From NCBI RefSeq assembly GCF_001447785.1, contig NW_015174844.1, positions 408,525 to 472,524 of the forward strand: a DNA stretch of 64,000 nucleotides. Direction: 5' to 3'. Origin of the DNA: Gekko japonicus (lineage: Eukaryota). The notes beneath the pieces were generated by a model. It searched no databases, was not told the DNA's origin, and worked only from the letters and a program-made list of their open reading frames with translations. The position numbers were made by a program, and so were the translations under genes. Positions within the stretch are counted from its first letter, which is position 1. Each line of letters opens with the position of its first letter. This document shows, in pieces, positions 3,182-53,922 of this stretch.

Positions 3182-4933
3182 CTACAGGAAGAAAATCTTT
3201 CCTTTTTCTGTTTGTCATATAAATGGGAAATGTTTGTGCCATTTAAATGGCATTCTTCTGCTTCTCAGGGCATCATTCTCCAGGAAGTCCACAGGCATTG
3301 CCATTTATAAGAGTATAATTTCCAGGTACTAATGGTTATACTTGAAAGACTTTACTAAGCTTTTTAGCCACAGACCCTGTCTGAAAACAACTCACTATAC
3401 GGTGGTGTGTTTTTTTTAGCAAGTCATCTTAGATAAGGAGTTCAGGAGTTCAGAAATATTTTAATAATTAAATAGTATTATTAAGCTGATAGACACTCAT
3501 GAACACAAAGAGCCCTCCTTGAACAAAACAATGGTCCATTTANNNNNNNNNNNNNNNNNNNNNNNNNNNNNNNNNNNNNNNNNNNNNNNNNNNNNNTCTG
3601 GCTCCTTCCAGCAACTTGCAATCTTAAGTATAATGCATCTGAAGCTTCTATTTAGCTTTCAAGGCTAATAAAACTTGGGCTCATCCCTTAAGCACATTTA
3701 TTTATTTATTTTTGTTGATTTCTATCCCGCCCATTCCGGCCTAGGCTAGCTCTGCATCCTGCATTAGGGAATTCTACAAATAAATTTCAGTACCATGTCA
3801 TGCATATCCTGGAACTGCTAAGTGTATTTTGAATGTTTGATGATATACTGTATACCAATAATTTCTTTCTAGTTGCTGTCGTCACCACCACCACCACCAC
3901 CACCACCACCTTTCCATATAGATAGCTGAACTGGTTTACAACAGAAGTCAATGAACACTATATCAACTTAGTCATATGACATTTTGATCCCCCAAACCCA
4001 TCACCCTCTTAGCTTTCAGATGAGTAGAGGACGGATATGGCAGGTAGAGAAGAGCCAATGTATCATGATACCAGGGGTGTGTGGCTGGTGAAGTAATACT
4101 TAATATTAAACAGGGGCATTACAAACATGTTCTTATTTTCATCTGTGGAATGTTGGAGGTTATATTTTAGCCATGAAGAAAAAAACCAGTCAGTTCGGTA
4201 AATACCAAGTGGCCCCTCTGCAGAACCAAACAGAGCAAAGAATTGAGAGCCACACCACCTTTCTCTGCTATCACCCTACTGATAGCAAAAGGAGACACAC
4301 AATCAAGATGTCCCAAATCTCTCATCTGGAGCAAAGGATTTCTATCTCAGTTTGTCTTAGACACTGAAGCAGAATTACCTTTTCCCTCAAGTAAGAAGCA
4401 ATGGTTAACATGTATGTCAGCTAATTATGAACACTAACTCCTAAAAACAACAATAGAACAAAACATGTTAATGGCCAGTAACAAATCCATGGATATTTTG
4501 AAGAAACAAATTAATCTTTACTGCAACATAATGGGCAATCTATTAGGACAGAAGGTAAAGCAAGATGCAGTCTGATTCCTTTAATGTGAATCATTGCAAT
4601 CAACACATACTGACCTCAAGGCTACAGTCAGCCTCTGCTTAGCTAATGCAATCCTCACAGACATGGTTAAACATGATCACATTCCAAAGTGAAGTAAGCT
4701 CTAAAAGGAATAGAAATCCCAGGGCAATTTGGAATTTTAATTTCTCACATGCCTGTTCCACAAGATCGGATGGATTTAATGAGAGAGTGATAACTTCTGC
4801 AATGCCCTTATTTATCTCAATATTTTCCTGTGTGTTGGTGCACATGCACATCGGACTATCTGACATTCACCATTTCTTAGGGCCATCTATACAGAATCCA
4901 ATGGTAAAGGTTTTTTTGGATGGTGTTTTTTCT

Positions 4934-8184: not shown

Positions 8185-9978
8185 GACTTCTGGTGGGTGG
8201 ATCGGTGATGGCGGTCGCTCTCCTCAATGCCCGAGGAGGTGACTAGCACACATTCGGCTCGGAGGGGTGCCACCTCAAGTGGCACCCCCACGGAGCCCTT
8301 GTGAAGGGTTCCAGGCCAGGGGGCTCTTGAGGGTTAGCCTCTTCGACGGCTTGATGCCAGAGAATAGAGGTTTCCCTCCGCCATGATGGTCCAGCCGATG
8401 GGTGACCTTAGGGTACAAGCCAATCTAACCGGGATAAGCACAGGAGATCGAGCAGAATAGCGTATGAAGAGAGTGGGGTCAAGATGTGACCAACAATGAA
8501 CATGAGTTTGAATTAAATGGACTATTTCTCTAAAACGGATTCCCCCCGTGGGAAAAACGGAGCACAAGGAGGGACGCCTCCTAAGCGCTTGAGCAGATTA
8601 ACGAAGCGAAGGGGGGAATAGGGGAAAGAAACAGCGATTTGTTTTGAGAGACTTACTTGAGCACCCATACTGAACCGACGAGTCTTTTGAGTTCTGGCAA
8701 AGCGGTTTTGAACTGTAAACAAAGTGGGAACATGGCCGCTTCTCAAGGGAAGCTGAAACCGAAAGGCAGTCAGAGTCCAAGACCGGAAGAGGGAGCAGAC
8801 GTCATGAAGATGTTGGCGGATATGCTGAAGCTGGTACTGGAGCAACTCAGTGGTATTAACCAGCAACTGGCCATGCTAAACCAAAACTTTGCTCTGCAGC
8901 AGCGCCAGCTGGCAGAGACGGAGAAGAAGGTGGAGCATGCAACTGAAAAAATAACAGAGATGGACACTGCAAACAAGAAGATGAAGAAAAGAGTGACAGA
9001 TGTGGAAGTTAAACAAAAGCTGCAGGAGAATCGTTTGTTACAGCTGCAAATTGATAAAGCCAACATGATTCTCAGATTTCAGTGAGTGCCTGAAAATGAA
9101 AAAGAAGATTTGAAGAAGACTCTGGGTGAGATCATTGCCCCAGTAACAGGCTTACCAGCGGATGAAATAGTCAAAGATATGGAGACTGCCTATCGGGCAT
9201 ACTCCAATTACATTAAAAAAAACAGCCTGCCAGGGGAGATTGTGGTCAAGTTTGCAAGAAGACAAACCAGAGATGCAATATTAAAGGCAACTTCGGCAAA
9301 TCCACTGAAATGTGGGAATGTTAAGACTTTAAAAGATATCCCATTTGAAATTCGTCAAAAGAGGGAGAAATTAATCTCATTTCTTCAGACAAATGGAATA
9401 CAGTACAGGTGGGCGAATCCTGGAGGTGTCATCTTTAAAATCAACGATAAAAGAGAGAAGATTGACTCCATCTTTAAAGCGAAGGAATTTCTGAGATGGC
9501 AGCTGGGGTCAGGGGAAGAACTTAAAGAAGAAGAAACAAAGTCAAGTGACTCTGCCACCTCTGGAACGAATGATGACTCTGTGGGTGAAGTGGGAGCAAG
9601 TAAAACTGGGCATGATTTTAGAGAGAGAAAGCAGAAGTAAGGGCAGAAGGACTCTTGAAATGCCCCTTTGAAGTAAAGAAGATGCTCAAGAAGTGTTCTC
9701 AAAATAACTAACTTACTAATATTGAAGCAGTAGTTTAAAAAAAAGGAAAAAAGAACTCACAAATATATTGTTATACTAACACGTATTAACTTACATATAG
9801 ATTAACATGAATATGATCTCCTACTCTTGGGTTTTTAGTTAGTGTGGGTATCTTTCCTTTATCCCTAGTTGTAGTCCTTCCCTTTATTTTCTGTTGTAGT
9901 TATGTAGTCTTATGAAAAAATAATAAAATTACCCTTTCGGGGGTTTCAAAAAAAAGAAAGAAAGAAAAGAAAAGAAAA
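8185..9978 (+). mobile_element. ORF1-only (half-L1/HAL1-like) retroposon, copy 1
   Basis: Starts GACTTCTGG; GC-rich 5'UTR; ORF1 at 8732-9640; ~300-bp 3'UTR; AATAAA at 9922; A-rich tail at 9948-9978; no ORF2. TSD not resolved. Confidence 0.85.
8732..9640 (+). pseudogene. L1-type ORF1 protein (coiled coil, RRM, CTD) with one in-frame stop at 9083-9085
   Basis: Track ORFs 8657-9085 and 9086-9640 are in one frame and together align end to end with the intact 318-aa ORF at 50197-51153 (LRFQ.V.E, YIKKN.LPGEIVV.F, LKDIPF, YRW..P.G). Confidence 0.88.
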
Positions 9979-10285
9979 TCAACTTGTGTTTCATACATTA
10001 AAGCAAAGCTTTTGACCTTGTGGATCATGAAAAGTTATGGCCGGTTTTAAAAGAACTGGGTGTGCCACAGCATCTGATTGTTTTCACTCACAAACTGTAC
10101 TCTGGACAAGATGCTACTGTTAGAACAGAACATGGAGAAAAAGAATGGTTTCCAATCGGCAAAGCTGTCAGACAACAAGGATGTATTTTATCTATTATCT
10201 CTTCAATATATATGCAGGGCATATCATAAGGAAAACTGGATTAGATTTAGATGAAGGTGGAGTGAACATTGGTGGAAGGAACATT
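9976..10285 (+). mobile_element. RTE/BovB-related LINE internal RT fragment
   Basis: KAFDLVDHEKLW..LKELGVPQHLI..LYSGQDATVRTEHGE.EWFPIGK.VRQ.GCILS. Confidence 0.85.
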
Positions 10286-10375
10286 CCCACTTGAGACATA
10301 AAGGAGATTGTAAGACGCTCTGAGACTCTGAGTGAAGGGTGGGGTATAAATCCAATCTCCTCCTCTTCTTCTTCA
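10286..10375 (+). mobile_element. 3' end of a Squam3-like SINE
   Basis: GGAGATTGTAAGACGCTCTGAGACTC..GGGTATAAATCCAATCTC(CTT)n matches the end of the copy at 23590-23897. Confidence 0.75.
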
Positions 10376-12531
10376 TGATTATAAATTTTCTCTTACTCCA
10401 TGGTTACAAAGAAAGGCTCTCTTTTTTCTATTGTTTAAATTCCTTATTTATCAAAACTACAAGCCATCAAGTCATTATTATCTGTTTCATGCAAAAATTC
10501 TATAAGGGGTTTCCAATCAGCAATAAACATAGTTATTGTCTTTAATCAATGAAGTCAGTTTAGCCATCTCTGCAAGTTCCAGCACCTTCACTAACCATTC
10601 CTCTATTGTAGGCAATGTTGGACTCTTCCACTTTTGTGCATATAATAATCTCGCAGCTATTGTCATATATAAGAACAAAATTCCATGACTTCTTTCCAGC
10701 TGAGTGTCCATTAAGCCCCAAAGAAAAGACTCTGGTTTCAATTGTCTATTAATCTTCAAAATCTAAATTAATAAATGTGTTTGTATCCTTTTTTTTTTGC
10801 TTTCTTACACGTCCACCACATATGGTAAAATGTTCCTTCATGTTGTTCATATTTCCAACATAGACTTGAAGTACCTTTATACATCTTGGCGAATTTCTCC
10901 AGAGACAAATACCAGCGGTACATTATCTTATAAAAGTTCTCTTTAAGGCTAGAATTTAAAGTATATTTCAGTCTTTTTAACCACATGTTTTCCCATTGTT
11001 CCATTCATGTCATGTCCAAAAATTTGGGCCCATTTTATTATAGATTATTTCACTTGTTCTTTCTCTGTCTCATATTTCAACAAAGGTTTACACATTTTGG
11101 CAATAAAATGTTCATCATTTGTATAAAGTTCTCTTTCAGAATTCAGTCTTAGATTGCTCAAAATCATAAAGCCTTTTATCTACTTTAAACCTTTCTTTGT
11201 AAATATGAAAACCATTGGCAAGTATATCCTTGGTTTTATTTTATATTCACCTAGCAAAAATTCTAAGATATCATGGTATGTTAACCATTTATGCAAACTT
11301 GTCATTTCTCTTCTATAATGAGCTTCTTGGGTCAATAGCCACAAAGGTATTTTTGGACAAATCCTAGGTTTATATTTATTCCATATTCTCAAGATGGCAT
11401 GTAACATAGTGGTTATTAAATTCTACATTAACCTTAGCTTTGTCATACTACAAGTATCCATGCCACCCAAATCTCAAATCATGTCCTCCTAAATCCAATA
11501 ATTTTCTGTTATTTAGCATGATCCATTCCATCCACACTAAACAACAAACAGCAAAATATAATTTCAAATCAGGTAAACCCAATCCTCCTCTTTCCTTTAC
11601 ATCCTGTAATATCTTATATTTAACTCATGGGTTTTCACCCTTGCCACACAAATCTAGATATATCTTTCTGCCGTTGGTTAGATGGAACCTCTTTTATCAA
11701 AACAGGAACTGTCTGAAACAAAAATAACATTCATCTTAATCATAGACAGTCTCCCCAAAAGTGACAGTTGAACTTTGTCCCATCTTAACAAATCTTTTTA
11801 AAATCTCATTCCAAGTCTTAACATAATTATTTTGAAATAACATAAAATTCATATTTGTCAAAGTAATATTCCAATATTTTACCTTTCTCAATTTTAAAAC
11901 CTGTTTTTATCAATTTTGTTTGTTCTTGTATTTTCATTTTTTTGTTAACATCTTAGTCTTCTGGTTATTGACTTTAAAGCCCGCTACTGCACCAAATTCT
12001 TTCAATTTGACCATTAAAGTTTCAATTTCCTTTACAGCATCTTCCAAGACCAGCACGAGATCATCAGCAGAGGCTCTTAATTTATAAGACTCTTTTTTAA
12101 TCTTTACACCTCCAATTCATCTTGTCTTATATCTCTATTCAATATTTCAAGAACAAAAATAAACAAAAGGGGTGACAGTAGACAACCTTGTCTTGTTGCT
12201 CTTTATATCTCACATGGTTTACTCAGATCTCCATTGATAATTATTTGTGGTCTGAGAGGTATAAATCAATTTTTACCCATTTCACAAAATTTTCTCCAAA
12301 ATCCATATCCTCCAAGACTTAAAAAAAAGTTCTAGTTCAAATTGTCAAAGGCCTTCTCTGCATCTAATAAGATCGATGCGGTTTGTTTTTCATTGTTTTT
12401 CCAAATATTCCAAAATACAGTTCTAACATTGTTTCTCAACTGTCTTTTAGGTAAAAAACCACTTTGATCTTTCAGCTATTGTGAACAACTTGTAATCATT
12501 ATTCAATAATGATATTTGTCTATAATTTCTT

Positions 12532-14312
12532 TCTTTCTTTCTTTTTAAACGTTTTAATTGCTTTTCTAAACTACACACACAAACAAACTAAAACTACGAG
12601 GAGCAAGAGATCGTTAATACAATTGTTTAAAGTAAGGACAATTCCCTATTGTCAAAGTAGTAATACATGAGAGTTAATACAATAGTTATATAAAAGATTG
12701 AGCGAGTGTTCACAAACAAATTTGGTTAGAGTGTATGCTTCTTAGTTCAGGATCATTGGTTCCTGATAATTATCAGGCCATTAGAGTTTCATTATTTTAC
12801 TTATTTCCTTCCTCTATGTTTCTTTTCAAACTCCTTTTTATTTTTAGGGGGCTTAGGAGCTGTAGCCCCTAGTTCTGCTTCAAAATCTAAGGATTCAGCC
12901 GACGAAGAGTTGGTAGAACTTTTCTCAGTTTTATCTTCTTCTTTTTCTGCATCCTTGTCATCCTCCAGTTTCTCAGGTCCATCTTTATCTTGTTGTTGGT
13001 GCTCAAGAATTTTTTTTGCTTTGAAGACAGAGTCAATTTTTTCTTTTTTGCTGTTGAATTTGAAAGTAAGCCCTTTCGGGGTTAACCATCTGTATGGGGT
13101 GTTGTGCTCCTGAAGAAACCATGCCAGGTCTCTGTACTGTCTTCTTCTTTTTCTGATCTCAAATGGAATGTCTTTTAAAATTTTAGTTTGTTCTCCTTGC
13201 ATTTTAAAAAAAAGGTCCATTTGTCACTTTCAGGATTAAGTCTCTTGTTGACCTTTTTGAGAATTTAACAAATATTTCCCCAGGCAGCTTATTTTTCTTT
13301 ATATATTCTGGGTATGTATGGTATACTATATCCATGTTGTTTTGTATTGCTTCTGTTGTTAAGCCTACCACGGGGGCCAGTTCTTTGCTTAAAATCTCTT
13401 TCAGGTTTTCACCTTTTTGCTCAGAAATGTTCTGAAATCTCAGGACATATGCTGATTTTTTCATTTGGAGACATAGCAATTGGTGATTCTCAGAGATGTT
13501 ATCCTTTTCCACCACCTCCAGTCTTCGTTCAACTTTTTTCAGCTTCTTATTTATCTTCTCTGTTTTTGCTGAAGTATCTTGAAGCTACTTGTGCATCAAA
13601 TCCATTTTCTGGTTGAGAGTGGTCATCTGGTCCACTAGAGGGCGCAGGGCTGCAGCAATCATTTTTGGGAAGTCTGTGGCTGGTTCCGGTTTGGTAACTG
13701 GAGATGATGAGCTGGCTGATCCTGTAAGTTTCACTTTCACCACCATTTTTTCTGCACACTGTGTCATTGTTTAAACTTAATAGGAAGTATTACAAAGTCT
13801 CTTAAAGCCTCTTAAGTCTGGAAAAATCGCTTTGTTGCTAATCTGCACCCCACTCCATCACCATTCACTCTTTTCAAGCCGCCCTTGCCTCCCACTTTCA
13901 CTCAGTCTGTTCGGGATGGGGATCCCCCCCCCAGCCGCTTGTTTGGGGCTTCAGGTCAGCTTTACTACCAGCAATCAAGTGGAGACTCGCTAAATCATAA
14001 GTTTGCTCCCATTCTTACTTGCGTTCATTACTGTGGTAGGGAAGATCAGTTCAGGAGGGTCTCTTGCGCGCTTGGTCCGGTATGCACCTCTAGGTACCAT
14101 TGCTGGCTCCGTGCTGCAAGGACCTATTGGGGCAAAAATCTGCCTCTATCCCTTGGCATTCCGCCTTGGGAGAGGCACCTCTCATGCCCCAGGCTGCAAC
14201 CCTCCTACAAAGGGTTGCGGGGGTCCAAGATCAACTCGGACCCCTCCCCATCGGCAATGATGGAGCAATGATGGAGCGCACCCACTTGCAAGTTGCCGAA
14301 ACCTGGAAGCTC
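12532..14312 (-). mobile_element. ORF1-only (half-L1/HAL1-like) retroposon, copy 2, nested in L1 ORF2
   Basis: Perfect 18-bp TSD ATTTGTCTATAATTTCTT at 12514-12531 and 14313-14330. Starts GAGCTTCCAGG; frameshifted ORF1 at ~13767-12801; ATTAAA plus (AAAG)n tail; 1781 bp, no ORF2. Confidence 0.92.
12801..13767 (-). pseudogene. Frameshifted L1-type ORF1
   Basis: Track ORFs 13585-13767, 13204-13515 and 12801-13220 are consecutive pieces: LRFQNISE..YIKKNKLPGEIFVKF..ILKDIPFEIRKRR..YRWLTPKG. Confidence 0.88.
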
Positions 14313-14736
14313 ATTTGTCTATAATTTCTTGTTAATGTTGGGTCTCATCCATCTTTGGGTATTAATGTTATATTGGCCTCTTTCCATGCCACCATGGCCT
14401 CCAGCATCTTTCCTCACTGTAAGACAGAATTTATTGTATTTTGTAAAGGTTGTAAAAGTTCATCCTCAAAGCAATATCCTTGCATGGCCTGAAGTAAAGT
14501 GCCTAAACTGAACCTTAAGACACTTCTATTAGCAGCCGGATTCTTCATACAGAGGACAGCACACAGCAAGCCCAAATCAAACAGTTTGCCTCAGGCAGCA
14601 GGATCCATGTGGCTGAAGCTTAGTCCAGACAAGACAGAGATGCCATTGATCAACAAAGCTGCTCCATGACTGCAGATTCAGCCTGTCCTATCAGAGGTTG
14701 CACTCTTCCTGATGGAGCAGGTTTTGTAGCTTGGGG

Positions 14737-29925: not shown

Positions 29926-30393
29926 GATCCATCTATGGCTTAGTTTTCACAGAGAGTTGCCAACCTGAGTCTGTGGAGATAAGGTAGCATATAAAATAAA
30001 TACACAGTAAATTAGGCAGTAAACTTGTATCCTGGCTACACCACTTCGGACTGCAGATGAGGGCTCATGAGACCGAATAGCTAAGTAGATGTTAAGAATT
30101 CTAGTCAAGATTCTTATATTACACTTTCTCTGTCCTGGGAACCCTATCTACACTCTGAAGAGCCATTCCTGAGGACTCGAATATCATAATGCCCCTATGT
30201 AAATCAATGGTGCGACCTCATTTGGAATACTGTGTGCAGTTCTGGTCACCACACCTTAAAATGGATATTATAGCTTTGGAAAAAGTGCAGAAAAAGGCAA
30301 CACGAATGATAAAAGGGATGGAAAACTTTTCCTATGAAGAAAGGTTAAAGCGCTTAGGGCTCTTTAGCTTGGAGAAATGACGACTGAGGGGTG

Positions 30394-31266
30394 ACATATT
30401 ATCATGTTTGGTGGAACTGTGAAAAAATTGCTAAATTCTGGAAGATTACCAAAAAAGTAATAGAAGAAATTACAAAGGTTAAATTGCAGCTGAAACCAGA
30501 AATCTTTTTACTCAATATCACACCAGATGGCATTAAACGAGATGATTTAATAATCATACTGTATATCAGGGGTCATTTCGTAGAAAAAGAGGTGCAGGAG
30601 CTCATTAGCATAACTTATTTGCATATGCCACACCCCCTGACATCACCGGAAGTGTGTCAGAAGGCAACACCCACCGCTCAGGCTCCACTGGACTGTTTTG
30701 GATTGCTAGCTACTGGTGTGTGGGGGGGGGGAACTGTGCAGATCTGTCCTCACAGAGGAGGGAGAGCTTGTACCTGAATAAAACTTGGTCTTAAAGGTGC
30801 CACTGGACTGTTTTGGACCCGGGGGCCGGGGGGAGCTTTGAAGCTTACCTGGCTGCTTCTTGCTCTGACTGAGGGCTGCTGGGAGCAGGGGGTGGGGCTT
30901 GTTGCATGTGCCTGCCCCCTGGGTTCTTTACTGCCGGAGCTCCACTCCTGTGCGCTCCTGCATGAAATGACCCCTGCTGTATATACTTACTATGTCGAGA
31001 ATATTAATTGCAAAACAATGGGAAAAGGATACGATACCCAGTAAAGAAGAGCTAAGGGATAAAATTATTGAAATAGCTGAATTAGATAAACTAAATATGA
31101 CTCTTTCAGGAAAAGATGAAACAACTTTTCAAAATAGATGGCAGAAAGTTTATAACTGGATGGAAAAAAACTGTTAGACGATCTTCCATTTGTACTTCCA
31201 ACAAATGTATATGTATTACTCTGTTATTTTATGTAATAGAAAACGTACCAATAAACTTATTTTAAA
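30394..31266 (+). mobile_element. L1 3'-terminal fragment
   Basis: TYYHVWWNCEKIAKFW..RILIAKQWEK..FQNRWQK (ORF2 C-terminus); AATAAA at ~31250 and a short A tail. Confidence 0.85.
30567..30976. mobile_element. hAT MITE, family C (CAGGGGTCATTTC TIR), nested in L1
   Basis: CAGGGGTCATTTCG...TGAAATGACCCCTG; perfect TSD CTGTATAT at 30559-30566 and 30977-30984. Confidence 0.92.
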
Positions 31267-34200
31267 AAGTGCAGAAGAGGGCAACTCGAATGATAAAAGG
31301 GATGGAAAACTTTTCCTATGAAGAAAAGTTAAAGCGCTTAAAGCTCTTGGAGAAACGACGACTGAGGGGAGACATGATTGAGGTTTATAAGATTATGCAT
31401 GGGATAGAGCAGGTAGAGAAAGAGATACTTTTCTCCCTTTCTCACAATATGAGAACTCGTGGGCACTCAATGAAATTGCTGAGCAGTCGGGTTAGAACGG
31501 ATAAAAGGAAGTACTCCTTCACCCAAAGAGTGATTAACACATGGAATTCACTGCCACAGGAAGTGGTGGCGGCTACAAGCATGGATGGCTTCAAAAGGGA
31601 ATTAGATAAGCATATGGAGCAGAGGTCCATCAGTGGCTATTAACCACAAGGTATAGATAGGGGCTCTGGGGCAAGTGATGCTCTGTCTTCTTGGTGCTCG
31701 GGGGGGTCAACAGTGGGAGGGCTTCTAATGTCCTGGCCCCACTGGTGGACCTCCTGATGGCACCTGGTATTTTTGGCCACTGTGTGATACAGAGTGTTGG
31801 ACTGGATGGGCCTTTGGCCTGATCCAACATTGGCGTCTCTTATGTTCTTATGTATGTTAGAACTACACCACTTTTCTTCTCCTCATCTGATGGTAAGGAT
31901 TCGGAAAAGTCATTTATAAATGATAAAAGATACTTTTTAGATTTAAGTATGAAGTATTTTATTATTGTGTTTTTATGGTGCCTGATCAGATATTTAACTG
32001 GAAGTTTCTGTTGTTGCTTTTAGTTTTGGTTCAGAGCAGGAAAGGTAACCAGATTTATGCCAGACCACTTGGCCTGGCACAGCAGCTCCCTTGCTGTATT
32101 CCAAAAGCAGGAGTAAATCAGGCTGGGCTACGGCTCAGCTCCGGGAGAGACAATGTCATCAACTGGAACTGTCCATCACTTAGAAGTGAGATTGGGTTTG
32201 TGGTTCAAGGTTTTTGGAGAAGTTTCAAGACTTTTCTATTTCCAGAAGGCTTTCAAATGAAATGTGTTGATATTATTGTCTGGTAGGTACTCAATGGTAC
32301 TTTTATGTTTTATCTGATTGAATTTTATAGTTTTAAAAAAATTAACTGACTTGAATGTCTATGAGGCAGAAATTAATTAAATATATCTTTTATTTCCATT
32401 TGGCACATTGTGGAATATGTGGTGGACTGTTTGGAAGATCCTTAATTGTACTAGGGATCTGGATAAGAAGACCTTTTGGACTTCCCTATTTTATAAGCCT
32501 GTGACTTTATACAGTAAAATTTAACCATTTTCTTTGGAGGCAATTTTCTTGGAGGAAGAAACATAAATATGGTTTAATTGCCACAGAAGTTACCAACACC
32601 TTATACCATGGAAGGTGGAAGAGAAGACCAAGTGTGTATATACCTAAGACCTTTATCAGTCCAATAGCCTAGGAATGAAAGCAAGTAAGGAGACAGCCCT
32701 AAAATAGTAGGTAGATCCACCTCCCAGACCACCCAGTAATTCAAATGCTAGCTTTAGTTAAGCTGTTTGTCACATTTTGTCCCAGTGCTAGTTTTCTGGA
32801 TGAACTTGCATAATGTAATGTAACTGACCCTTTTCTTACCTCTGCTTCAAAGAAGGGTCAGTTAGGATAAGGGGTACTTTTAAAAAGACAGACCCCAGAG
32901 ATGAATAGTTTAGGGTCAGTTGCAGGATAACCTCTGGAGAAAGGTTATCCTGGGGTTACTATTTCGTATGAACTAGACTTCAGACATTGAGCTTTAAAGG
33001 GTTTCTCTAGCCTAGCTATAAATCAGCCTGAAAGTTTGCATGGAGCTCAGATTTGGTTAAAAATAGTGTCAGGGCTGCCTCAGTGCTTTGCATTTGGAGT
33101 TTAAGACAATATCCAAAACCAGGTGTGATTTCCAACAGAGGTTTCACACAACTGCTGTTATGGCTGAACAAGGAAAATTTGGGTGGAAGAAAGAGTGGGC
33201 AGTGGAAATTTTAAACAAGAACATCATGGATGTACAAAGAAATGTAAGGGCCTTAGCTACAAGCTCTGTGAGGGAAAGGTTCTAAAGCTTGCATCCAAAA
33301 GAAAGCTATTTATTTATCTTAACTCTCATTCTCATTAGGAAGGCAAAAAAAAATAATGAAATTGATACCATTTCTTTTTTTGGGGTGGTGGGGAGGCTGG
33401 CTGTGGTTGCATAATAGCACTGTCCTATAATCTTATTCCAAATGTGTGGGTGCCTCTTAGGTTTCCTCAAATATTTTATGGAATGTTTTCAAAGATTCCT
33501 ATAAAATCAAGCCAACAATGTCTGCATCCTCTACCACATCAGTGAAGAACTGCACCATGTTTCAAAGTCATGTAAAATCCTCTTTATGGGAAGCATTTAT
33601 ATTTGACAAAGTATAAATTTAGCAGACCATTTCCCTGAGGTAAAACATACTGGTGGTGAAACTCCACAAACGTCATTAGATTACACCAAGCATTCATTTG
33701 TCCTAGTGGACTACAGCTGGCAAGCTAAAGAGGACTTGGCTGGTGCTACCTTCAAATGCAGCAGAAACAAAGGATAGATTCAAATTACTATTTATTTCCT
33801 ATTGCATAGTAACATCTGCAGTTATCGTGTGTCAAAATCCACATGGAATCCTGGTTGCTCAATATGGTTTAATTCAGTTGCAACCACATGACAAGCAACA
33901 ACCTTTTTACCTGACGATGCCTTTGGAAACAATGGGCCCCACTGGGCAATCTATCTTTATACGAGTACCACTACCTGTACAGCAGGGTCAAAGATCAATC
34001 CCACATTCAATCTCTGACATCTCAGATAGCAGGCTGAATCATATGGGATGTAATCTCCCCTGCCTAAGACCTTGGAAAGCTTTGGAAGACAGTGCAGGGC
34101 TAGGTGGATGAATGGTGTGAATCAGTATGAGGCAGTTTCATAGTATTGTAAAACCAAATGCATATAGAAGGACAGACGCTGTATAATGGTCACTGAATTA

Positions 34201-34414: not shown

Positions 34415-36858
34415 ATAACATAAGAACATAAGAGACGCCAATGTTGGATCAGGCCAAAGGCCCATCCAGTCCAACACTCTGTGTCACACAGTGGCCAGAA
34501 ATACCAGTGCCATCAGGAGGTCCACCAGTGGGGCCAGGACATTAGAAGCCCTCCCACTGTTGACCCCCCCCAAGCACCAAGATGACAGAGCATCACTTGC
34601 CCCAGAGTCCCTATCTATACCTTGTGGCTAATAGCCACTGATGGACCTCTGCTCCATATGCTTATCTAATTCCCTTTTGAAGCCGTCCATGCTTGTAGCT
34701 GCCACCACTTCCTGTGGCAGTGAATTCCAAGTGTTAATCACTCTTTGGGTGAAGAAGTACTTCCTTTTATCCGTTCTAACCCGACCGCTCAGCAATTTCA
34801 TGGAGTGCCCACGGGTTCTTGTATTGTGAGAAAGGGAGAAAAGTACCTCTTTCTCTACCTGCTCTTTCCCATGCATAATCTTATAAACCTCAATCATGTC
34901 ACCCCTCAGTCGTCGTTTCTCCAAGCTAAAGAGCCCTAAGCGCCTTAACCGTTCCTCATAGGGAAAGTGTTCCAACCCTTTTATCATTCGAGTTGCTCTT
35001 TTCTGCACTTTTTCCAAAGCTATAATATCCTTTTTAAGGTGTGGTGACCAGAATTGCACACAGTATTCCAGATGAGGTCGCACCATTGATTTATATAGCG
35101 GCATTATGATATTGGCTGATCTGTTTACAATACCCTTCCTAATAATCCCCAGCATAGCATTGGCCTTCTTTATTGCAGTCACACACTGTCTCGACATTTT
35201 CAGTGAGTTATCTACTACAACTCCAAGATCTCTCTCTTGATCTGTCTCTGCCAGTTCAGACCCCATCAACGTGTATTTATAGTTAGGATTTTTGGCTCCA
35301 ATGTGCATCACCTTGCACTTGGCCACATTGAACCCCATTTGCCATGTTGACGCCCACTCGCCCAACTTTGACAGATCCCTTTGGAGTGCCTCACAATCCT
35401 CACTGGTTTTCACCACCCTGAACAACTTCGTATCATCCGCAAATTTAGCCACTTCACTGCTTACTCCCAACTCCAAATCATTAATGAACAAGTTAAAAAG
35501 CAGTGGACCAAGTACTGATCCCTGTGGTACCCCACTGCTTACACCCCTCCACTGGGAGAACTGCCCATTTATACTCACTCTCTGTTTTCTATTAATTAGC
35601 CAGTTTTTGATCCATAAAAGGACTTGTCCTTTTATCCCATGATTTTTGAGCTTACTTAGGAGCCTTTGATGAGGAACTTTATCAAAAGCTTTCTGGAAGT
35701 CAAGGTAAACAATATCTATTGGATCCCCCTTGTCCACATGTTTGTTCACCCCCTCAAAGAACATTAACAGGTTAGTGAGACAAGATCTTCCCTTACAGAA
35801 CCCATGTTGAGTCTGCCTCAATAGGTTTTGTTCATCTATGTGCCTACTAATTCTTTCCTTAATAATGGTTTCCACCAATTTACCCGGTATCGACGTCAGA
35901 CTGACTGGCCTGTAATTTCCCGGATCTCCTCTGGAACCCTTTTTAAAGATGGGAGTGACATTAGCTACCTTCCAGTCCTCAGGAATGGAGGCTGATTTTA
36001 AGGAGAGATTACATATTTTTGTCAGGAGATCCACAAGTTCACAATTGAGTTCTTTCAGAACTCTTGGATGTATGCCATCTGGGCCTGGTGATTTATCAGT
36101 TTTTAAGTTGTTTATCAGTTTTAGGACCTCCTCTCTCGTCACCTCAATCTGACTCAGGTCTTTCAACACCCCTCCCGAACTCAGCGGCTCTGGAGTGGGC
36201 AAGCACCTCTCATCTTCCACAGTGAAGACGGAGGCAAAAAATGCATTTAGCTTCTCAGCCATTTCCCTATCATCCTTCAGTACTCCTTTTACCCCTTGGT
36301 CATCCAAGGGCCCCACTGCCTCCCTGGCTGGTTTCCTGCTTCTAATGTATTTGAAGAAAGTTTTATTGTTGGTCTTTACGTTTTTCGCTATATGCTCCTC
36401 ATATTCCCTTTTTGCCTGCCTGACCACAGACTTGCATTTTATTTGCCATAGCCTGTGTTCCGTTTTATCAGCCTCACTGTGACTAGCTTTCCACTGCTTA
36501 AAGGAATCCTTTTTACCTTTTACAGCTTCCATTACTTTGTTAACCATGCAGGCTTTTTCCTATACCTGTTTGTGCCTTTCCTAAGCTGCGGAATATATTT
36601 TTTTTGCGCTCTAGGATTGTAGTTTTAAATAGTTTCCAAGCTTCCCCAATGGTTTTGACCCTTTCTACTTTTCCTTTCAGTTTCCGCCCCACATGTCCCC
36701 TCATATCAGAGAAGTTACCCCTTTTAAAGTTAAAAGTGGTTTTGTCAGTCTTTTTGGCCAATTTCCTATTTATACAAATGTTGAACTCAACAACATTATG
36801 ATCACTGTTCCCAAGCGGTGCAATCCCTTTTACATCTCTCACCAGGTCTTGAGTGTTT
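34415..36858 (-). mobile_element. Young 5'-truncated CR1 LINE
   Basis: ORF2 from the end of the endonuclease (LGNSDH) through RT to the stop codon; 3'UTR; (TTCTTATG)n tail at ~34415-34432. Confidence 0.97.
34628..36547 (-). CDS. CR1 ORF2 reverse transcriptase, uninterrupted 639-codon stretch (element truncated, upstream frameshift near 36600)
   Basis: KSPGPDGIHP, NYRPVSLTS, YLDFQKAFDKV, GVPQGSVLGP, KFADD and [13 protein letters not shown] motifs. Confidence 0.95.
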   Translation of the reverse strand: MVNKVMEAVKGKKDSFKQWKASHSEADKTEHRLWQIKCKSVVRQAKREYEEHIAKNVKTNNKTFFKYIRSRKPAREAVGPLDDQGVKGVLKDDREMAEKLNAFFASVFTVEDERCLPTPEPLSSGGVLKDLSQIEVTREEVLKLINNLKTDKSPGPDGIHPRVLKELNCELVDLLTKICNLSLKSASIPEDWKVANVTPIFKKGSRGDPGNYRPVSLTSIPGKLVETIIKERISRHIDEQNLLRQTQHGFCKGRSCLTNLLMFFEGVNKHVDKGDPIDIVYLDFQKAFDKVPHQRLLSKLKNHGIKGQVLLWIKNWLINRKQRVSINGQFSQWRGVSSGVPQGSVLGPLLFNLFINDLELGVSSEVAKFADDTKLFRVVKTSEDCEALQRDLSKLGEWASTWQMGFNVAKCKVMHIGAKNPNYKYTLMGSELAETDQERDLGVVVDNSLKMSRQCVTAIKKANAMLGIIRKGIVNRSANIIMPLYKSMVRPHLEYCVQFWSPHLKKDIIALEKVQKRATRMIKGLEHFPYEERLRRLGLFSLEKRRLRGDMIEVYKIMHGKEQVEKEVLFSLSHNTRTRGHSMKLLSGRVRTDKRKYFFTQRVINTWNSLPQEVVAATSMDGFKRELDKHMEQRSISGY

Positions 36859-48981: not shown

Positions 48982-49669
48982 TGGTGGGCCATCCCTCCAC
49001 ACCTAATCCAAAATGTGGGAGAGGATGCAGTCCTTGGAGGAATGGCGGGCAACGTCCACAGCATGGATAGGCCAGTCTGGGAGTTCCTCAACGAGGAGGA
49101 TCTGGTGTGCGGGAGCCGGGTCGGGGTCAATGGAACGCAGTGGCAGGTGGCTGAGTGTGTCAGCATGTCCCACCACCTTCCCTGGGTGATACTGAAGACC
49201 ATACTGGTAGCCGGCGAGGAAGATCGACCAGCCCAAGACCCACAGTCGCGGCATTTGTGGCATCTGGCAGTCTGGAGCAAAGAGGCCCAGCAACCGCTTG
49301 TGGTCTGTTATGATGGTGAAGGGCCGGCCATACAGGAAGTCATGGAACTTCTTCACCCCCACCATAATTGCCAAGCCCTCCTTGTCTATCTGCATGTAGT
49401 TGTGCTCGGCAGATGACAAAGTGCGGGAGTAGTATGCCACTGGGCCCTCCCAGCCATGAGGCAGCTTGTGCCCCAAGATGGCGCCAACTCTGTACGGGGA
49501 GGCATCACAGGTGAGGATGACTGGCAACTGTTCATCGAAGTGGGCCAGGACCGAATTGGATACCAGCAGGTTCTTGACTGCCTGGAAAGCATCGACTTGC
49601 CTTTGGCCCCAGACCCAGTCCTCTTCCACGAGGTGGTGATCAGAACATCATCAAAAAATGGTGTGACTC

Positions 49670-51487
49670 ACTTCCGGTTTATAGCGTCCCGGGGATGTAA
49701 ACTGCACACCAGCATGTGGGAGGGGGTCCGACAGGTCGTGCCCCCCCCGAGCCTTGGTAAAAGGCTCCCAGCCAGGGGGCTTTTGAGGGGCGACCTCTTC
49801 GATGGCCGAAAGCCGGAGAATTGAGGCGCCCCTCCGCCCTGAAGGTCCTGCTGCTGAGTGACTGCATGGTACGAGTGCTGCTGACCGGGACAAGCTTTGG
49901 AGATCGGGCAAAATAAATGATGATGAGCAACGCCGAATGGCCAACAGCGAACTGTGAGTCGGGTTGAAGCGAGCATAAAGATATAAAAAGAAGCTGCCCC
50001 CCCTAAAAAGCTATGGGAAAGTGAGCGGGGGAGGGATCCCTCCCAAACGCATAGACAAAACACAGACGGAAACAGGGGGGAGCAGAAAAATAAGCGACTA
50101 AAACTGTTATAAGAGACTTACCAGAATGCAGAAAAGCGTTTGGGTGAATATCAGAAACTTTAGCAACTGCTTTGAAAAGTAAACAAATCCAAAAAGATGG
50201 CGGGGAAGAAACCGGAGAAAGAGAAGCTGTTGAAATCGAAACTAGGGGCCAGTCCTCGAACGGATGAGGTCACTGAGCTCTCAAAACTCTTAGCTGACTC
50301 CCTGCACCCCCTGCTGGATGAGATCACTGGCATTAAGCAACAACTGTTAGTAATTGGGCAGAGTGTCACAGCTCAGCAGATGCAACTGACTCAATCCTTA
50401 AAAGCAACAGAGCAAATGGGAGAGAAGGTGAAGGAAATGAACGTCACTACGAAAAAAGTTAAGAAAAAGGTGCAAAAGCTGGAAATGAAGCAAGCTACAA
50501 AAGAGTCAAAGCTTTTACAGCTACAAATGGATAAAGCAAATTTGATCCTGTGGTTTCAAGGGGTCCGGGAAATTGAAGGAGAGAATCTGAAGCAACGGCT
50601 GAGTGAAGCAAAAGCCCCAATGACAGATTTAACAGCAGAATACCTTTGCAGTGAGATGGGTGTGGTCTACAGGTCTTATTCATCGTACATTAAGAAAAAT
50701 AATCTGCCTGGGGAAATAGTGGTCAGATTCTCGAAGAGACATGTGAGAGATGCTATTTTGAAAGCAAATTCGGGAACACCCTTGAAAATTGGGGGCAATA
50801 ATATCAGGATTTTAAAAGACATTCCATTTGACGTAAGACAGAAGATAAAGAACTATAAAGAATTAATCCTTTTCTTACAAACAAATGACATCAGTTACAG
50901 GTGGTTAACCCCAGAAGGCGTCATTTTCAAGATTAACGATAAAAAAGAAAAGATTGACTCTGTTTTTAAAGCACATGAATTTCTGCGGACACAGCTTGGG
51001 GAACCAGAAGATGGCAAAGAGGAGGGGGGGAAAAGCAAATCTAATGGCAAGTTGGGCTCGGGGTCTTTGGACGAGGACTCCCCTTCTGAAAAGGGGGTGG
51101 TTGCCCCCAAAAGCCCTTACAAACTGTGGATTAGAAAAGATAAGAATAAATAAGGGCTGAAGGTCTCTGATTTGTGCCTGAAAAAAATGTTGAAATAACT
51201 TGGGGATGCTCTGGGAATTTCTTTAAACAGTTAAAGGGATAGTTAAACGATAATTAATCTAGCATAACAGACTAAGTTCATTGTATTATTAGTAGCTTTT
51301 TGAAAATAGCATGGTGTTAAGCTGATGTATGATCTCCTACTCTTGGGTTTTAGTTAGTTGTGGGTCTTTTTTCTTTACTCCCTAGATGTAGCTCCCTTTC
51401 CTATATTTTCTGTTGTAGTTTTGTAGTCTGGGGGGAAAAACCCCAATAAAAACCTCCCCCTAGGGGGATGAAAAAAAAGAAAAAAAG
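49670..51487 (+). mobile_element. ORF1-only (half-L1/HAL1-like) retroposon, copy 3, full length with an intact ORF
   Basis: 16-bp TSD AAAAATGGTGTGACTC at 49654-49669 and 51488-51503. Starts ACTTCCGG; CpG-rich 5'UTR; one ORF; AATAAA at 51445; poly(A) at 51471-51487; no ORF2. Confidence 0.93.
50197..51153 (+). CDS. L1-type ORF1 protein, 318 aa (coiled coil, RRM, CTD, acidic/basic tail)
   Basis: Open ORF in a strong Kozak context (AAGATGG). Heptad-rich N-terminal half; NLILWFQGVRE, PGEIVVRF, IRILKDIPF and YRWLTPEG are typical of L1 ORF1p (Transposase_22-like) by recall. Confidence 0.88.
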   Translation: MAGKKPEKEKLLKSKLGASPRTDEVTELSKLLADSLHPLLDEITGIKQQLLVIGQSVTAQQMQLTQSLKATEQMGEKVKEMNVTTKKVKKKVQKLEMKQATKESKLLQLQMDKANLILWFQGVREIEGENLKQRLSEAKAPMTDLTAEYLCSEMGVVYRSYSSYIKKNNLPGEIVVRFSKRHVRDAILKANSGTPLKIGGNNIRILKDIPFDVRQKIKNYKELILFLQTNDISYRWLTPEGVIFKINDKKEKIDSVFKAHEFLRTQLGEPEDGKEEGGKSKSNGKLGSGSLDEDSPSEKGVVAPKSPYKLWIRKDKNK

Positions 51488-53922
51488 AAAAATGGTGTGA
51501 CTCCAGGGATCCCTTTAAGAATAGAGTCCATTAGGTTTTGGAAGATCCCAGGAGCCATGCTGACCCCAAACTGTAGCCGTTGCACTTGGAAAGCACCCTG
51601 GTGTGTCACTATGGTTTGGGCCTGTTGGTAGGCCTGCACTAAGTCCAATTTCCCAAAGATTTTTGCACCAGCCAGCATGGCCAGGACATGGCTGATGACT
51701 GGCACTGGGTAGGCATGGTCCTGCAGTGCCTTGTTAATTGTGCATTTGTAGTCCGCACAAATGCGGACGTCCCCATTGGTTTTAATAGGAGTGACTATTG
51801 GCGTCTCCTAGAGCATGTGGGGGACCGGCTCCAGAACCCCTTGGGCTGCCAAGTGATCTATCTCCTCCTCCGTCTTGGGTTTCAGTGCAAAAGGGACGTG
51901 CCAAGCCTTGAACCTTATGGGCCACACCTCTGGGTTGAGCTGGAGTGAGATTGGGGGGAGGGGTCAGTGTAATTGCCAAGCGTTCTATCAAAAATGGCTG
52001 GAAACTCATCACACACCTGCCGGAAATCCCATAGTTCATTTTGGTTCATCCCCGTTACCTTGAACCCCAAGAGTGCAAACCATGCCAGCCCCAACAGACT
52101 CGTGCGCTGGCCCTCGACTACAAATAAGTCCAACAAACCATTGAATTGCCAGTACTTAACCTGGAACTTGCCCACCCCTTTCACGGCCACCATGTTCTGT
52201 TGAAAGTCTCTGAGGACGATGCTGGCCAGTTTAAGGTGAGGCCCTCCCCCAGGGCACAGCCTCTGTAGAAATGATGGTCATGGAAGACCCTGTGTCCAAC
52301 TCCATCCTGCAAGGGGTGCCCTCGATTAACACAGTCACCTTTTTTGGGGTGTCCTCGGGCAAATGTACTACCTGCAGTGGCTGGACGGACGTGGTGTGTA
52401 GCTCTTCGGGGTGCAAGCACTCCTGGTTAGTTGCCTGTCTCTTCTGGGTTCCCTTTGAGTGACAGGCGCATACAATGTGGCCGGCCTTCCCGCAACTCCG
52501 ACACGTTGAATCCCTGGAGCAGCAGGAGCGGTATTCATGGAGGTCCCCTCAGCTGGTGCAGAGCGTTGGTGAGGCAGTCTTGGTGGTGCGGCGTGGGCGC
52601 AAACCCGACGAGGCAGATGGGTGAGCATCTCGGCGAGCTGGACAGTGCATCTGCATGCAATTCCATCCACTTCCTCAAACAACTACCAATGATAGGCTGT
52701 TGTCAGAACCATTAATTCCTCATTGGCCACCTCCAGAGTCTTGGTGGGCTATTGTTCTGGAGCTCCGAGCTCAGCCAGTCTCTGGTAGAAATAGTCCTGG
52801 AATGTTCCAGTCCCAATCCATAACATCTTCAGAAGCAAAGCGCTTCACTTCTGTACTATATGCATTGCCAATGCTGTTGTTTCTCACTGTGTCATGTCTG
52901 GGCTGAAAAGGGAAGCTGTAGCTGGTCCCATATTCCTTTGCACTGAGAGTCAAATCCACACATATAAAACAGAGGGTGAATAGTATGTTTGTGTTTGTGT
53001 GTGTGTTAATTTTACAACAAATGTATATGGTGCTAAACTCTCTTGATAGCTTCCCTCCCCACAGACTGTTGCCAGACACTTTTCTCATTACATTCCAGTA
53101 CTAAATCTAAACTTGGTTGGGTAGGAAAACAGAGGGGAAGTGCGAGGAAGTAAGTGGTAGGCAGGGAGAAGGTGACCACACATCTTGATTACTCTAAAAA
53201 TCACCCACCATATGAGACTGGGGTAGACCTGGGTTTAAATAAACACACTATGCATGATCACATCTCGCTTGACTCAGTCAAGGAGTTCAGATGTACCATT
53301 TTATAAAAGGGCTAAGTGACAAATACAGGAACTGCTGCTGGATGTATTCATGTACAGCTTTCTTCAAACTGACATTTCTCTATGAAATGGAATCCATTTG
53401 AAGAAGAGGAATGTATGTAGGGGGGGGAATCCTATGTATGTTGGCATTTCAAATTTAGGACTGGGTGTTCAACAAAATTTATTCATTCAACATGTTTATG
53501 ATGAAAAATAATTAAACATAATTAAATAAAAATAAACATATCCCCCCAAAGGCCAGATAACAATGTGGGTTAATCTAAGGTTTATTACAATCATTAAATA
53601 GCTGAATTGCAACTCTTTCTTTCTTACCAGCACAGGTTCTCTAGACTTCATCAGCATTTGTGCAGAACCACCCTGGCTAAGAGCTTGGAGCAATAATATA
53701 GCCATGCCTCATGTTTCCTTGTCTGCACTCTAAAAGGTGCCAAGAGATGCTACTCATCAATACATAGATCATTGCCTAATGGGATACATGTACCCCTAAT
53801 TCTTCATACCGCTGCATTAGAGTGGACTGGATGGCAGGATAAGGAATCTTTATTCTCCCAGCTTCCGCTACTGTTCTCTGCAAGTCCCTGTTGTCATATC
53901 ATCTAGCAGTATCTACCTTGCA

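What the first reader, a model, noticed from the sequence alone, without database searches (positions are those of the whole stretch)
49670..51487. Family of ~1.8-kb retroposons encoding only an L1-type ORF1 (half-L1 system), three diverged copies in 64 kb
Seen: three elements of matching length and layout (8185-9978, 12532-14312, 49670-51487), each with a 5' CTTC(C/T)..GG start, ~530-550-bp 5'UTR, one ~300-320-codon ORF1, ~270-320-bp 3'UTR, poly(A) signal and A-rich tail. Copies 2 and 3 are bounded by 18- and 16-bp TSDs with A-rich starts, so each was inserted as a complete unit. They are not L1s broken after insertion. Copy 3 keeps an intact 318-aa ORF. Established: L1 needs ORF2 for TPRT and usually inserts 5'-truncated, and ORF1-only HAL1 elements are known, mainly from mammals. 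Inference: this is a long-lived non-autonomous lineage that supplies its own RNA chaperone and borrows L1 ORF2. The three proteins differ widely yet share the same motifs, implying several subfamilies under purifying selection. I cannot tell whether this reptile family is already catalogued.
Basis: partly seen in the sequence, partly recalled or inferred. Interest (0 to 1): 0.85.

Follow-up and report, generated by a model that had tools for sequence, protein, structure and literature searches.

The report
ORF1-only half-L1 retroposons in a squamate
Three 1.8-kb retrotransposon copies in this lizard- or snake-type genome carry the start, the RNA-binding gene (ORF1) and the tail of an L1 element but no reverse transcriptase, so they most likely spread on the enzyme of complete L1s; this "half-L1" design is known from mammals.

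Summary
Three units of 1781-1818 bp align end to end. Each has a 527-566 bp 5'UTR, one ORF of about 300-318 codons, a 250-320 bp 3'UTR, a poly(A) signal and an A-rich tail. Copies 2 and 3 have perfect 18- and 16-bp target-site duplications; copy 1 has none that is clean. Only copy 3 has an intact ORF (318 aa).

The protein is an L1 ORF1p. Pfam misses it, but a 62-sequence family profile hits human L1 ORF1p at E 4e-14. An AlphaFold model (pLDDT 84) matches the ORF1p trimer structure as a coiled coil, RRM and CTD. All named homologues are squamate.

The 5' ends fit the published Anolis L1 clade-1 start, GACTTCCGGTG..ATGGCG. The 3'UTR resembles an L1 3'UTR in length and GC content. It has stops in every frame and no endonuclease trace.

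The copies share only 36-53% of residues, yet pN/pS is 0.39-0.50. They therefore come from separate source lineages whose protein was under selection.

Mobilisation by L1 ORF2p in trans is inferred, not shown. Whether the design arose once or several times is open.

This scan has already found and followed up the same family on other DNA of this genome. I found no published squamate HAL1; Repbase and Dfam could not be checked. Verdict: a new member of a known kind.

The parts
49654..49669 (.). Copy 3, 5' target-site duplication (AAAAATGGTGTGACTC)
   Evidence: 16/16 identical to 51488-51503
49670..50196 (+). Copy 3 5'UTR (527 bp, 52% GC, CpG o/e 0.71). It starts with ACTTCCGGTT. The block 49741-49915 is conserved with copy 1.
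   Evidence: (73% over 175 bp). The start fits the Anolis L1 clade-1 consensus in PMC5381506.
50197..51153 (+). Copy 3 intact ORF1, 318 aa. Coiled coil aa 25-114, RRM aa 117-207, CTD aa 211-267, disordered acidic/basic tail aa 268-318. Strong Kozak context (A at -3, G at +4).
51154..51470 (+). Copy 3 3'UTR. It holds a pyrimidine-rich module (51328-51470) conserved with copy 1, and AATAAA at 51445-51450.
   Evidence: (80% over about 165 bp). Stops in all frames.
51471..51487 (+). Copy 3 A-rich tail (A8 G A7 G)
51488..51503 (.). Copy 3, 3' target-site duplication
8185..8731 (+). Copy 1 5'UTR (547 bp). It starts with GACTTCTGGTG-N12-ATGGCG.
8732..9640 (+). Copy 1 ORF1 (302 codons), broken by one in-frame TGA at 9083-9085
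9641..9978 (+). Copy 1 3'UTR, with AATAAA at 9922-9927 and an A/G tail at 9948-9978. No clean target-site duplication.
14313..14330 (.). Copy 2 target-site duplication on the element's 5' side
   Evidence: 18/18 identical to 12514-12531
13747..14312 (-). Copy 2 5'UTR (566 bp). It starts with GAGCTTCCAGG and shares a block of about 105 bp with copies 1 and 3.
   Evidence: (z 8-9 against shuffles)
12801..13746 (-). Copy 2 ORF1, broken by TAG at 13585-13587 and by a frameshift in a T run near 13204-13220
12532..12800 (-). Copy 2 3'UTR with an ATTAAA signal and an (AAAG)n-like tail (12532-12546). Outside the tail it is not significantly similar to the 3'UTRs of copies 1 and 3.
   Evidence: (z about 3)
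12514..12531 (.). Copy 2 target-site duplication on the element's 3' side

Best explanation
These are full-length copies of a non-autonomous, ORF1-only derivative of squamate L1, a HAL1-type or 'half-L1' element. Each unit keeps three L1 parts: the L1 5' terminus with its presumed internal promoter, an ORF1 that encodes a coiled-coil/RRM/CTD RNA-binding protein, and an L1-like 3'UTR with a poly(A) signal. ORF2, which supplies the endonuclease and reverse transcriptase, is absent.

Proposed cycle: the 1.8-kb RNA is transcribed from its own 5'UTR. It is translated into ORF1p, which coats the RNA that encoded it. The particle then uses ORF2p made by autonomous L1s for target-primed reverse transcription at T-rich sites. 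This leaves 16-18 bp duplications and an A-rich tail.

Shown here: the anatomy, the identity of the protein, insertion of whole units, absence of endonuclease and reverse transcriptase, purifying selection on ORF1, and conserved non-coding modules.

Inferred: promoter activity, cis-coating by ORF1p, and supply of ORF2p in trans.
For: Protein identity:
- Atlas features point to Transposase_22 clusters at 0.94.
- A profile search gives 357 homologues. Every named one is squamate, and UniProt calls some 'L1 transposable element RRM domain-containing protein'.
- 15 of 62 homologues hit PF02994.
- The 62-sequence profile hits human L1 ORF1p (2ykp, 2yko) at E 4e-14 across coiled coil, RRM and CTD.
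- The AlphaFold2 model has pLDDT 83.8. Its best Foldseek hits are the ORF1p trimer, at E 2e-10 and TM up to 0.74.

L1 origin of the ends:
- Copy 1 starts GACTTCTGGTG-N12-ATGGCG and copy 3 starts ACTTCCGGTT. The published Anolis clade-1 consensus is GACTTCCGGTG-N8-ATGGCG (PMC5381506).
- The 3'UTR length and GC content fit clade-1 3'UTRs.

No ORF2:
- Two homologues that carry an endonuclease domain match the units only in their ORF1 part.
- The 3'UTRs have 5-13 stops in every frame.

Insertion of whole units: perfect duplications that start in A-rich sequence, and A/G tails.

Selection: pN/pS is 0.39 (0.32-0.46) between copies 1 and 3, and 0.29 in the RRM and CTD, with pS 0.78, which is saturated. 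Yet each copy has at most two disabling lesions. Most of the divergence therefore arose in functional source lineages.

Conserved non-coding modules between copies 1 and 3: 73% over 175 bp in the 5'UTR and 80% over about 165 bp at the 3' end. Both are far better kept than synonymous sites.
Against: - Pfam itself does not reach the window proteins, and phmmer against PDB gives only E 0.89. Homology rests on profile and fold.
- No autonomous partner L1 was identified. The two L1 ORF2 3' fragments in this window have 3'UTRs unrelated to these elements.
- The conserved 3' module does not fold better than shuffled sequence (z -0.1 to +1.5), so its function is unknown.
- Copy 2's 3'UTR is not demonstrably homologous to the others.
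Confidence: 0.85

Rival explanations
1. The ORF1-only design arose more than once. The copy 2 lineage and the copy 1/3 lineage were each born separately from different L1 families by loss of ORF2, as HAL1s were born repeatedly in mammals. On this view there is no single ancient ORF1-only lineage.
For: - Copy 2's 3'UTR is not significantly similar to those of copies 1 and 3 (z about 3, mostly the tail).
- The shared 5' block is weak evidence for a shared ORF1-only ancestor, because lizard clade-1 L1 families conserve their 5'UTR starts across families anyway (PMC5381506).
- The path length between copy 2 and copy 1 is 1.85 changes per site.
- HAL1s originated independently several times in mammals (PMC5753468).
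Against: - The three copies and P0001 form one clade (SH-aLRT 93), with no protein known to be linked to ORF2 inside it.
- All three have a similar short 5'UTR (527-566 bp, against 792-1465 bp in Anolis clade-1 L1) and nearly the same total length.
Confidence: 0.3
2. The copies are sporadic by-products of autonomous L1s: prematurely polyadenylated or internally deleted transcripts, each inserted once. On this view they are not a self-propagating family.
For: Premature polyadenylation of L1 transcripts is well known in mammals (cited in PMC5381506). No partner or parent L1 could be compared here.
Against: - Three copies with 36-53% protein identity share the same boundaries and layout.
- There is no endonuclease remnant, and the 3'UTR has stops in all frames.
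- The 3'UTR has L1-3'UTR-like length and GC content, while clade-1 L1 has almost no inter-ORF spacer.
- pN/pS well below 1 shows that the ORF1-bearing sources persisted under selection.
- Other windows of this genome carry many similar units. These are unchecked scan notes.
Confidence: 0.07
3. The copies are processed retrocopies of one or more host genes domesticated from L1 ORF1, in the manner of L1TD1. On this view they are not transposable elements.
For: L1 ORF1 has been domesticated in mammals as L1TD1 (PMC4161310, listed). Annotators list squamate homologues as ordinary genes, for example 'apolipoprotein A-IV-like' and 'trichohyalin-like'.
Against: - Each copy begins at the canonical L1 5' terminus.
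- Young copies, with perfect duplications and zero to two lesions, differ by about 40% at the DNA level. This requires several concurrent sources.
- Three copies sit within 64 kb, all inside other transposons.
- The gene names are automatic labels on coiled-coil proteins.
Confidence: 0.04

Closest known systems
Mammalian HAL1 (half-L1) families: Repbase HAL1, HAL1b, HAL1M8 and lineage-specific HAL1s (Smit 1999; Bao & Jurka 2010, as cited in PMC5753468)
   Same: Both are non-autonomous L1 derivatives that encode only ORF1p. Both show L1-type insertion hallmarks. Both are presumed to borrow ORF2p. HAL1s are known to have arisen repeatedly.
   Different: This family sits in squamate L1 (clade-1-type 5' terminus), so it is an independent origin. 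Its protein is about 18% identical to human ORF1p in the structural alignment. It has two conserved non-coding modules and at least two or three deeply diverged subfamilies with young copies, which matches the many-families pattern of lizard L1.
Autonomous L1 of lizards, Anolis clade 1 (Boissinot & Sookdeo 2016, PMC5381506)
   Same: The 5' extremity motif, an A-rich ORF1 of about 1 kb, a 3'UTR of about 200-570 bp at about 33% GC with pyrimidine tracts, AATAAA and a poly(A) tail. The 5'UTR start is conserved across very divergent families.
   Different: There is no ORF2 (3.7 kb missing). The 5'UTR is about 550 bp instead of 792-1465 bp. Total length is 1.8 kb instead of 6.4 kb.
Drosophila HeT-A (telomeric non-LTR element that encodes only Gag/ORF1 and relies on reverse transcriptase in trans); comparison from general knowledge
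   Same: An ORF1-only non-LTR retroelement that persists long term and depends on another element's reverse transcriptase.
   Different: HeT-A belongs to the Jockey clade, has a different Gag fold, targets telomeres and serves a host function.
Non-coding L1 parasites (Alu, SVA, processed pseudogenes)
   Same: Trans-mobilisation by L1 ORF2p, target-site duplications and A tails.
   Different: Those encode no protein. This family keeps its own ORF1p under purifying selection.

Membership tests
HAL1-type (ORF1-only) non-autonomous L1 derivative | Encodes a protein homologous to L1 ORF1p | tested here: met
   The family profile hits human ORF1p at E 4e-14. Foldseek's top hits are 2yko, 2ykp and 2ykq at E 2e-10. 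Atlas gives 0.94.
HAL1-type (ORF1-only) non-autonomous L1 derivative | Lacks ORF2 (endonuclease and reverse transcriptase) | tested here: met
   Each 1.8-kb unit holds a single ORF. Homologues that carry an endonuclease domain match only in their ORF1 part. The 3'UTRs have stops in all frames.
HAL1-type (ORF1-only) non-autonomous L1 derivative | Inserted as a complete unit by L1-type target-primed reverse transcription (target-site duplication, A-rich tail, poly(A) signal) | tested here: met
   Perfect 18- and 16-bp duplications for copies 2 and 3. Tails and signals are present. Copy 1 has no clean duplication.
HAL1-type (ORF1-only) non-autonomous L1 derivative | Non-coding ends derived from L1 | tested here: inconclusive
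   The 5' extremity fits the published Anolis clade-1 consensus. The 3'UTR fits only in length, GC content and pyrimidine tracts. It is not similar to the two L1 3' ends in this window.
HAL1-type (ORF1-only) non-autonomous L1 derivative | A propagating family, not single deletion derivatives | tested here: met
   Three independent insertions share the layout but have 36-53% protein identity, with pN/pS 0.39-0.50. Genome-wide copy number was not measured here; scan notes report many more.
HAL1-type (ORF1-only) non-autonomous L1 derivative | Mobilised in trans by L1 ORF2p | not testable with these tools
   This needs a retrotransposition assay or a partner identified from the whole genome.
L1 ORF1p type II (Pfam PF02994 Transposase_22 / coiled coil-RRM-CTD) | Reaches the Pfam model | tested here: not met
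   No PF02994 hit at E up to 0.1 for any window ORF. 15 of 62 homologues hit it at E up to 0.01, the best at 3.8e-5.
L1 ORF1p type II (Pfam PF02994 Transposase_22 / coiled coil-RRM-CTD) | A long N-terminal coiled coil followed by an RRM and a CTD | tested here: met
   The AlphaFold2 model has a helix at 25-114, a beta-alpha-beta-beta-alpha-beta RRM at 117-207 and a CTD at 211-267, with pLDDT above 90 over residues 40-260. It aligns over about 200 columns with the trimer structure.
Mammalian HAL1 families, by descent | Derived from mammalian L1 lineages | tested here: not met
   All named homologues are squamate and the 5' end is of the lizard L1 type. The resemblance to mammalian HAL1 is one of design, by independent origin.

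The most novel reading that the evidence does not exclude
Squamate L1 may run partly as a two-component system. In this reading the ORF1-only elements are co-evolving partners of ORF2-supplying L1s, some of which have decayed ORF1s, and not mere parasites. The strongly conserved 3' module of about 160 nt would be the sequence-specific handle by which ORF2p picks its template. That would amount to stringent 3'-end recognition within the L1 clade.
Probability: 0.1. Interest if true: 0.85.

Novelty: new member of a known kind. Interest (0 to 1): 0.55.

Why it matters
HAL1 elements are the only L1 parasites that keep a protein, and so far they are described only from mammals. A squamate family with young, intact copies has three uses.
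- It would show that the half-L1 strategy arises wherever L1 is active.
- It would offer a natural test of whether an element's own ORF1p, acting in cis, is what earns it access to ORF2p.
- It would explain a class of squamate gene models annotated as 'apolipoprotein A-IV-like', 'trichohyalin-like' or 'M protein-like', which are L1 ORF1 homologues.

Repeat annotation of squamate genomes should include this family.

Tried and rejected
Searches that gave nothing or little:
- Pfam on all ORF pieces: only coiled-coil noise.
- Word-indexed protein search: no hit.
- phmmer against PDB: only E 0.89.
- The first AlphaFold run, on a 5-row alignment, failed for the RRM and CTD (pLDDT 50). It was replaced by the 62-row run.
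- Rfam on copy 3: nothing above noise, so there is no small-RNA-derived head.
- The bacterial-type promoter and terminator scan is irrelevant here and came back empty.

Hypotheses tested and not supported:
- A stable fold in the 3' module. It is not better than shuffles. Only a small hairpin just before the tail is visible in copies 1 and 3.
- Similarity between the 3'UTRs and the two L1 3' ends in the window. It is not significant.
- A vestige of ORF2 in the 3'UTR. None was found.
- The only long reverse-transcriptase ORF in the window (34628-36547, minus strand) is CR1-like by its motifs and unrelated.

Expression and the genomic context of homologues therefore stay untested.
- Bao & Jurka 2010 is not held in the library.

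Other limits:
- JC-corrected dN/dS is undefined because pS is at or above saturation. I report uncorrected pN/pS, which is conservative.
- I did not read the Gypsy pol through the insertion site of copy 3. I only describe the two flanks.
- Literature searches for a squamate HAL1 were blank.
Full report
**1. What is there**

Layout of the three copies:

| Copy | Coordinates, strand | 5'UTR (bp) | ORF | 3'UTR without tail (bp) | Poly(A) signal |
|---|---|---|---|---|---|
| 1 | 8185-9978, + | 547 | 909 nt; one in-frame TGA at 9083-9085 | 309 | AATAAA |
| 2 | 12532-14312, - | 566 | 946 nt; TAG at 13585-13587 and a frameshift in a T run near 13204-13220 | 251 | ATTAAA |
| 3 | 49670-51487, + | 527 | 957 nt; intact, 318 aa | 319 | AATAAA |

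- Each copy ends in a short A-rich tail with interspersed G.
- All three ATGs sit in a strong Kozak context.
- The repeat finder gives perfect target-site duplications of 18 nt for copy 2 (12514-12531 and 14313-14330) and 16 nt for copy 3 (49654-49669 and 51488-51503). Both begin in A-rich sequence.
- Copy 1 has only a degenerate candidate duplication.
- blastn and tblastn find no other copy or fragment of the family in the window. All three members present are therefore full length.

Each copy landed in another transposon.
- Copy 3 lies between RNase H and reverse-transcriptase fragments of a Ty3/Gypsy-type pol on the minus strand. I describe these flanks only and did not read the gene through the insertion.
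- Copy 2 lies in the reverse-transcriptase region of a decayed, 5'-truncated L1 ORF2 on the same strand.
- Copy 1 lies next to a LINE reverse-transcriptase fragment.

**2. The protein is an L1 ORF1p**

Direct searches are weak.
- Pfam gives only coiled-coil noise.
- The word-indexed protein search finds nothing.
- phmmer against PDB finds human ORF1p at E 0.89.

Deeper methods agree with one another.
- Language-model features place the protein with Transposase_22 clusters at 0.94.
- A profile of the window proteins finds 357 homologues among 1.84 billion representatives, 193 of them at E 1e-10 or better.
- Every homologue that carries a name is squamate: Gekko, Eublepharis, Varanus, Pantherophis, Pseudonaja, Micrurus, Ahaetulla, Vipera, Anolis and Sceloporus. 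UniProt labels some of them 'L1 transposable element RRM domain-containing protein'.
- 15 of 62 homologues reach PF02994 at E 0.01 or better.
- The 62-sequence profile hits the human L1 ORF1p crystal chains at E 4e-14. The match runs from the end of the coiled coil through the RRM and the CTD.
- With that alignment, AlphaFold2 gives a confident model (pLDDT 83.8). It has a 90-residue helix, an RRM and a CTD, followed by a disordered tail.
- Foldseek's best eleven hits are all human L1 ORF1p structures (E 2e-10 for the trimer, TM up to 0.74).
- Two homologous gene models (P0031 and P0137) continue into an Exo_endo_phos domain. The protein family therefore includes the ORF1 of ORF2-bearing L1s.

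**3. The ends are L1 ends, and ORF2 is truly absent**

Boissinot and Sookdeo (PMC5381506) report that Anolis clade-1 L1 families share the 5' extremity GACTTCCGGTG-N8-ATGGCG. They also report that lizard 5'UTR starts are conserved across families that are very divergent in their ORFs.
- Copy 1 begins GACTTCTGGTG-N12-ATGGCG.
- Copy 3 begins ACTTCCGGTT.
- Copy 2 begins GAGCTTCCAGG.

The same paper gives these figures for clade 1: an inter-ORF spacer of 0-110 bp (ORF1 and ORF2 often overlap), and a 3'UTR of 345 +/- 118 bp at 33% GC with pyrimidine tracts, AATAAA and poly(A). The 3'UTRs here are 251-319 bp at 31.5-37% GC. They contain pyrimidine-rich stretches.

The 3'UTRs have 5-13 stops in each frame. 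They show no similarity to the endonuclease parts of P0031 or P0137.

The 5'UTR of about 550 bp is shorter than the 792-1465 bp of Anolis clade 1. It is 52% GC, with CpG o/e about 0.7 in copies 1 and 3.

**4. Evolution**

- Protein identity is 53% between copies 1 and 3 and about 36% between copy 2 and copy 1.
- Between copies 1 and 3, synonymous sites are saturated (pS 0.78) while pN is 0.30.
- Uncorrected pN/pS is 0.39 (bootstrap 0.32-0.46) for the whole ORF and 0.29 in the RRM and CTD. It is 0.46-0.50 for pairs that include copy 2.
- Each copy carries at most two disabling lesions, and two of them have perfect duplications. The insertions are therefore young compared with their mutual divergence. 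Most of that divergence built up in functional source lineages whose ORF1p was under selection.

Two non-coding blocks are kept far better than synonymous sites between copies 1 and 3.
- One is 175 bp in the 5'UTR, at 73% identity.
- The other is the last 165 bp or so of the 3'UTR, at 80% identity.
- Either they are constrained cis elements (promoter; 3' function) or they were exchanged between subfamilies by recombination. I cannot separate these two explanations.

Further points on the modules:
- The 3' module does not fold more stably than shuffled sequence.
- Copy 2 shares the 5' block (z 8-9) but not, demonstrably, the 3'UTR (z about 3).

In a maximum-likelihood tree of 101 proteins, the window copies and one unnamed database protein form a clade: (copy 2,(P0001,(copy 1,copy 3))), with SH-aLRT 93. 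This clade sits inside a 35-row group (99) that also holds gecko proteins and the endonuclease-linked snake model P0031. Rows shorter than 240 aa or longer than 700 aa were left out, and the root is arbitrary. For most rows it is unknown whether ORF2 follows, so one origin cannot be distinguished from several.

**5. Partner L1**

The window holds two L1 ORF2 C-terminal fragments: one at about 10425-14440 on the minus strand, interrupted by copy 2, and one at 30395-31265 on the plus strand. Their 3'UTRs are unrelated to those of the ORF1-only copies. The donor of ORF2p is therefore not identified here.

**6. Comparison and novelty**

[quoted passage not shown] Here it is built on squamate L1, so it is an independent origin.

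Full-text searches found no squamate HAL1. The main comparative paper on lizard L1 does not mention one. Repbase and Dfam could not be queried.

This scan has already noted the same kind of element in many other windows of this genome, and two follow-ups reached the same reading (s1-814602 and s1-821544). I treat those notes as leads, not as evidence.

What this report adds:
- the match of the 5' terminus to the published lizard L1 consensus;
- the argument that the 3'UTR is an L1 3'UTR and not an inter-ORF spacer;
- quantified purifying selection;
- non-coding modules that are more conserved than synonymous sites;
- the tree;
- a negative result for 3'-end sharing with the L1 fragments in this window.

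**Verdict**

This is a new member of a known kind, of moderate interest.

Noticed in passing
window 30280-31375: A 5'-truncated L1 ORF2 C-terminal fragment (about 30395-31265, plus strand) is inserted in CR1-like sequence. It is flanked by an unusually long direct duplication of about 112-118 bp at 93% identity (30280-30397 and 31264-31375). The fragment itself carries an internal insertion of about 400 bp (about 30570-30975) that contains a 23-nt repeat.
   Followed up: partly
window 10425-14440, minus strand: A decayed, 5'-truncated L1 ORF2 runs from reverse-transcriptase motifs to a C-terminal ORF at 10517-10759, followed by a short 3'UTR and tail. Copy 2 of the ORF1-only family sits inside its reverse-transcriptase region in the same orientation. 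The L1's 3'UTR is unrelated to that of the ORF1-only elements.
   Followed up: partly
window 34628-36547, minus strand: An intact 639-aa ORF with an RVT_1 domain (E 4.7e-36) and CR1-like C-terminal motifs. A 100-aa ORF directly upstream (36540-36842) has no Pfam hit. This may be a young CR1-type LINE.
   Followed up: partly
window 10005-10364, plus strand: A LINE reverse-transcriptase fragment (RVT_1 E 0.0015; BovB/RTE-like by my reading of the motifs) lies immediately 3' of copy 1. It is presumably the element that copy 1 inserted into.
   Followed up: partly
window 49003-49629 and 51460-51705, minus strand: RNase H and reverse-transcriptase fragments of a Ty3/Gypsy-type pol lie on either side of copy 3, in the order expected if copy 3 split the gene. 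I described them only and did not read them through.
   Followed up: partly
homologues P0002, P0014, P0052, P0053, P0039, P0031: Public squamate annotations name L1 ORF1 homologues 'apolipoprotein A-IV-like', 'M protein, serotype 6-like' and 'trichohyalin-like', or fuse them into PRDM9 and UBE2E2 gene models. These are probably transposon-derived misannotations.
   Followed up: no
window 51454-51469, 9931-9945, 12547-12556: A short palindrome or hairpin lies just before the tail, with a different sequence in each copy: CCCCCTAGGGGG in copy 3, ACCCTTTCGGGGGT in copy 1 and AAACGTTT in copy 2. The wider 3' module does not fold better than shuffles.
   Followed up: partly
window 161-346 and 3543-3596: Runs of N (assembly gaps or masked sequence). 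I left them untouched.
   Followed up: no
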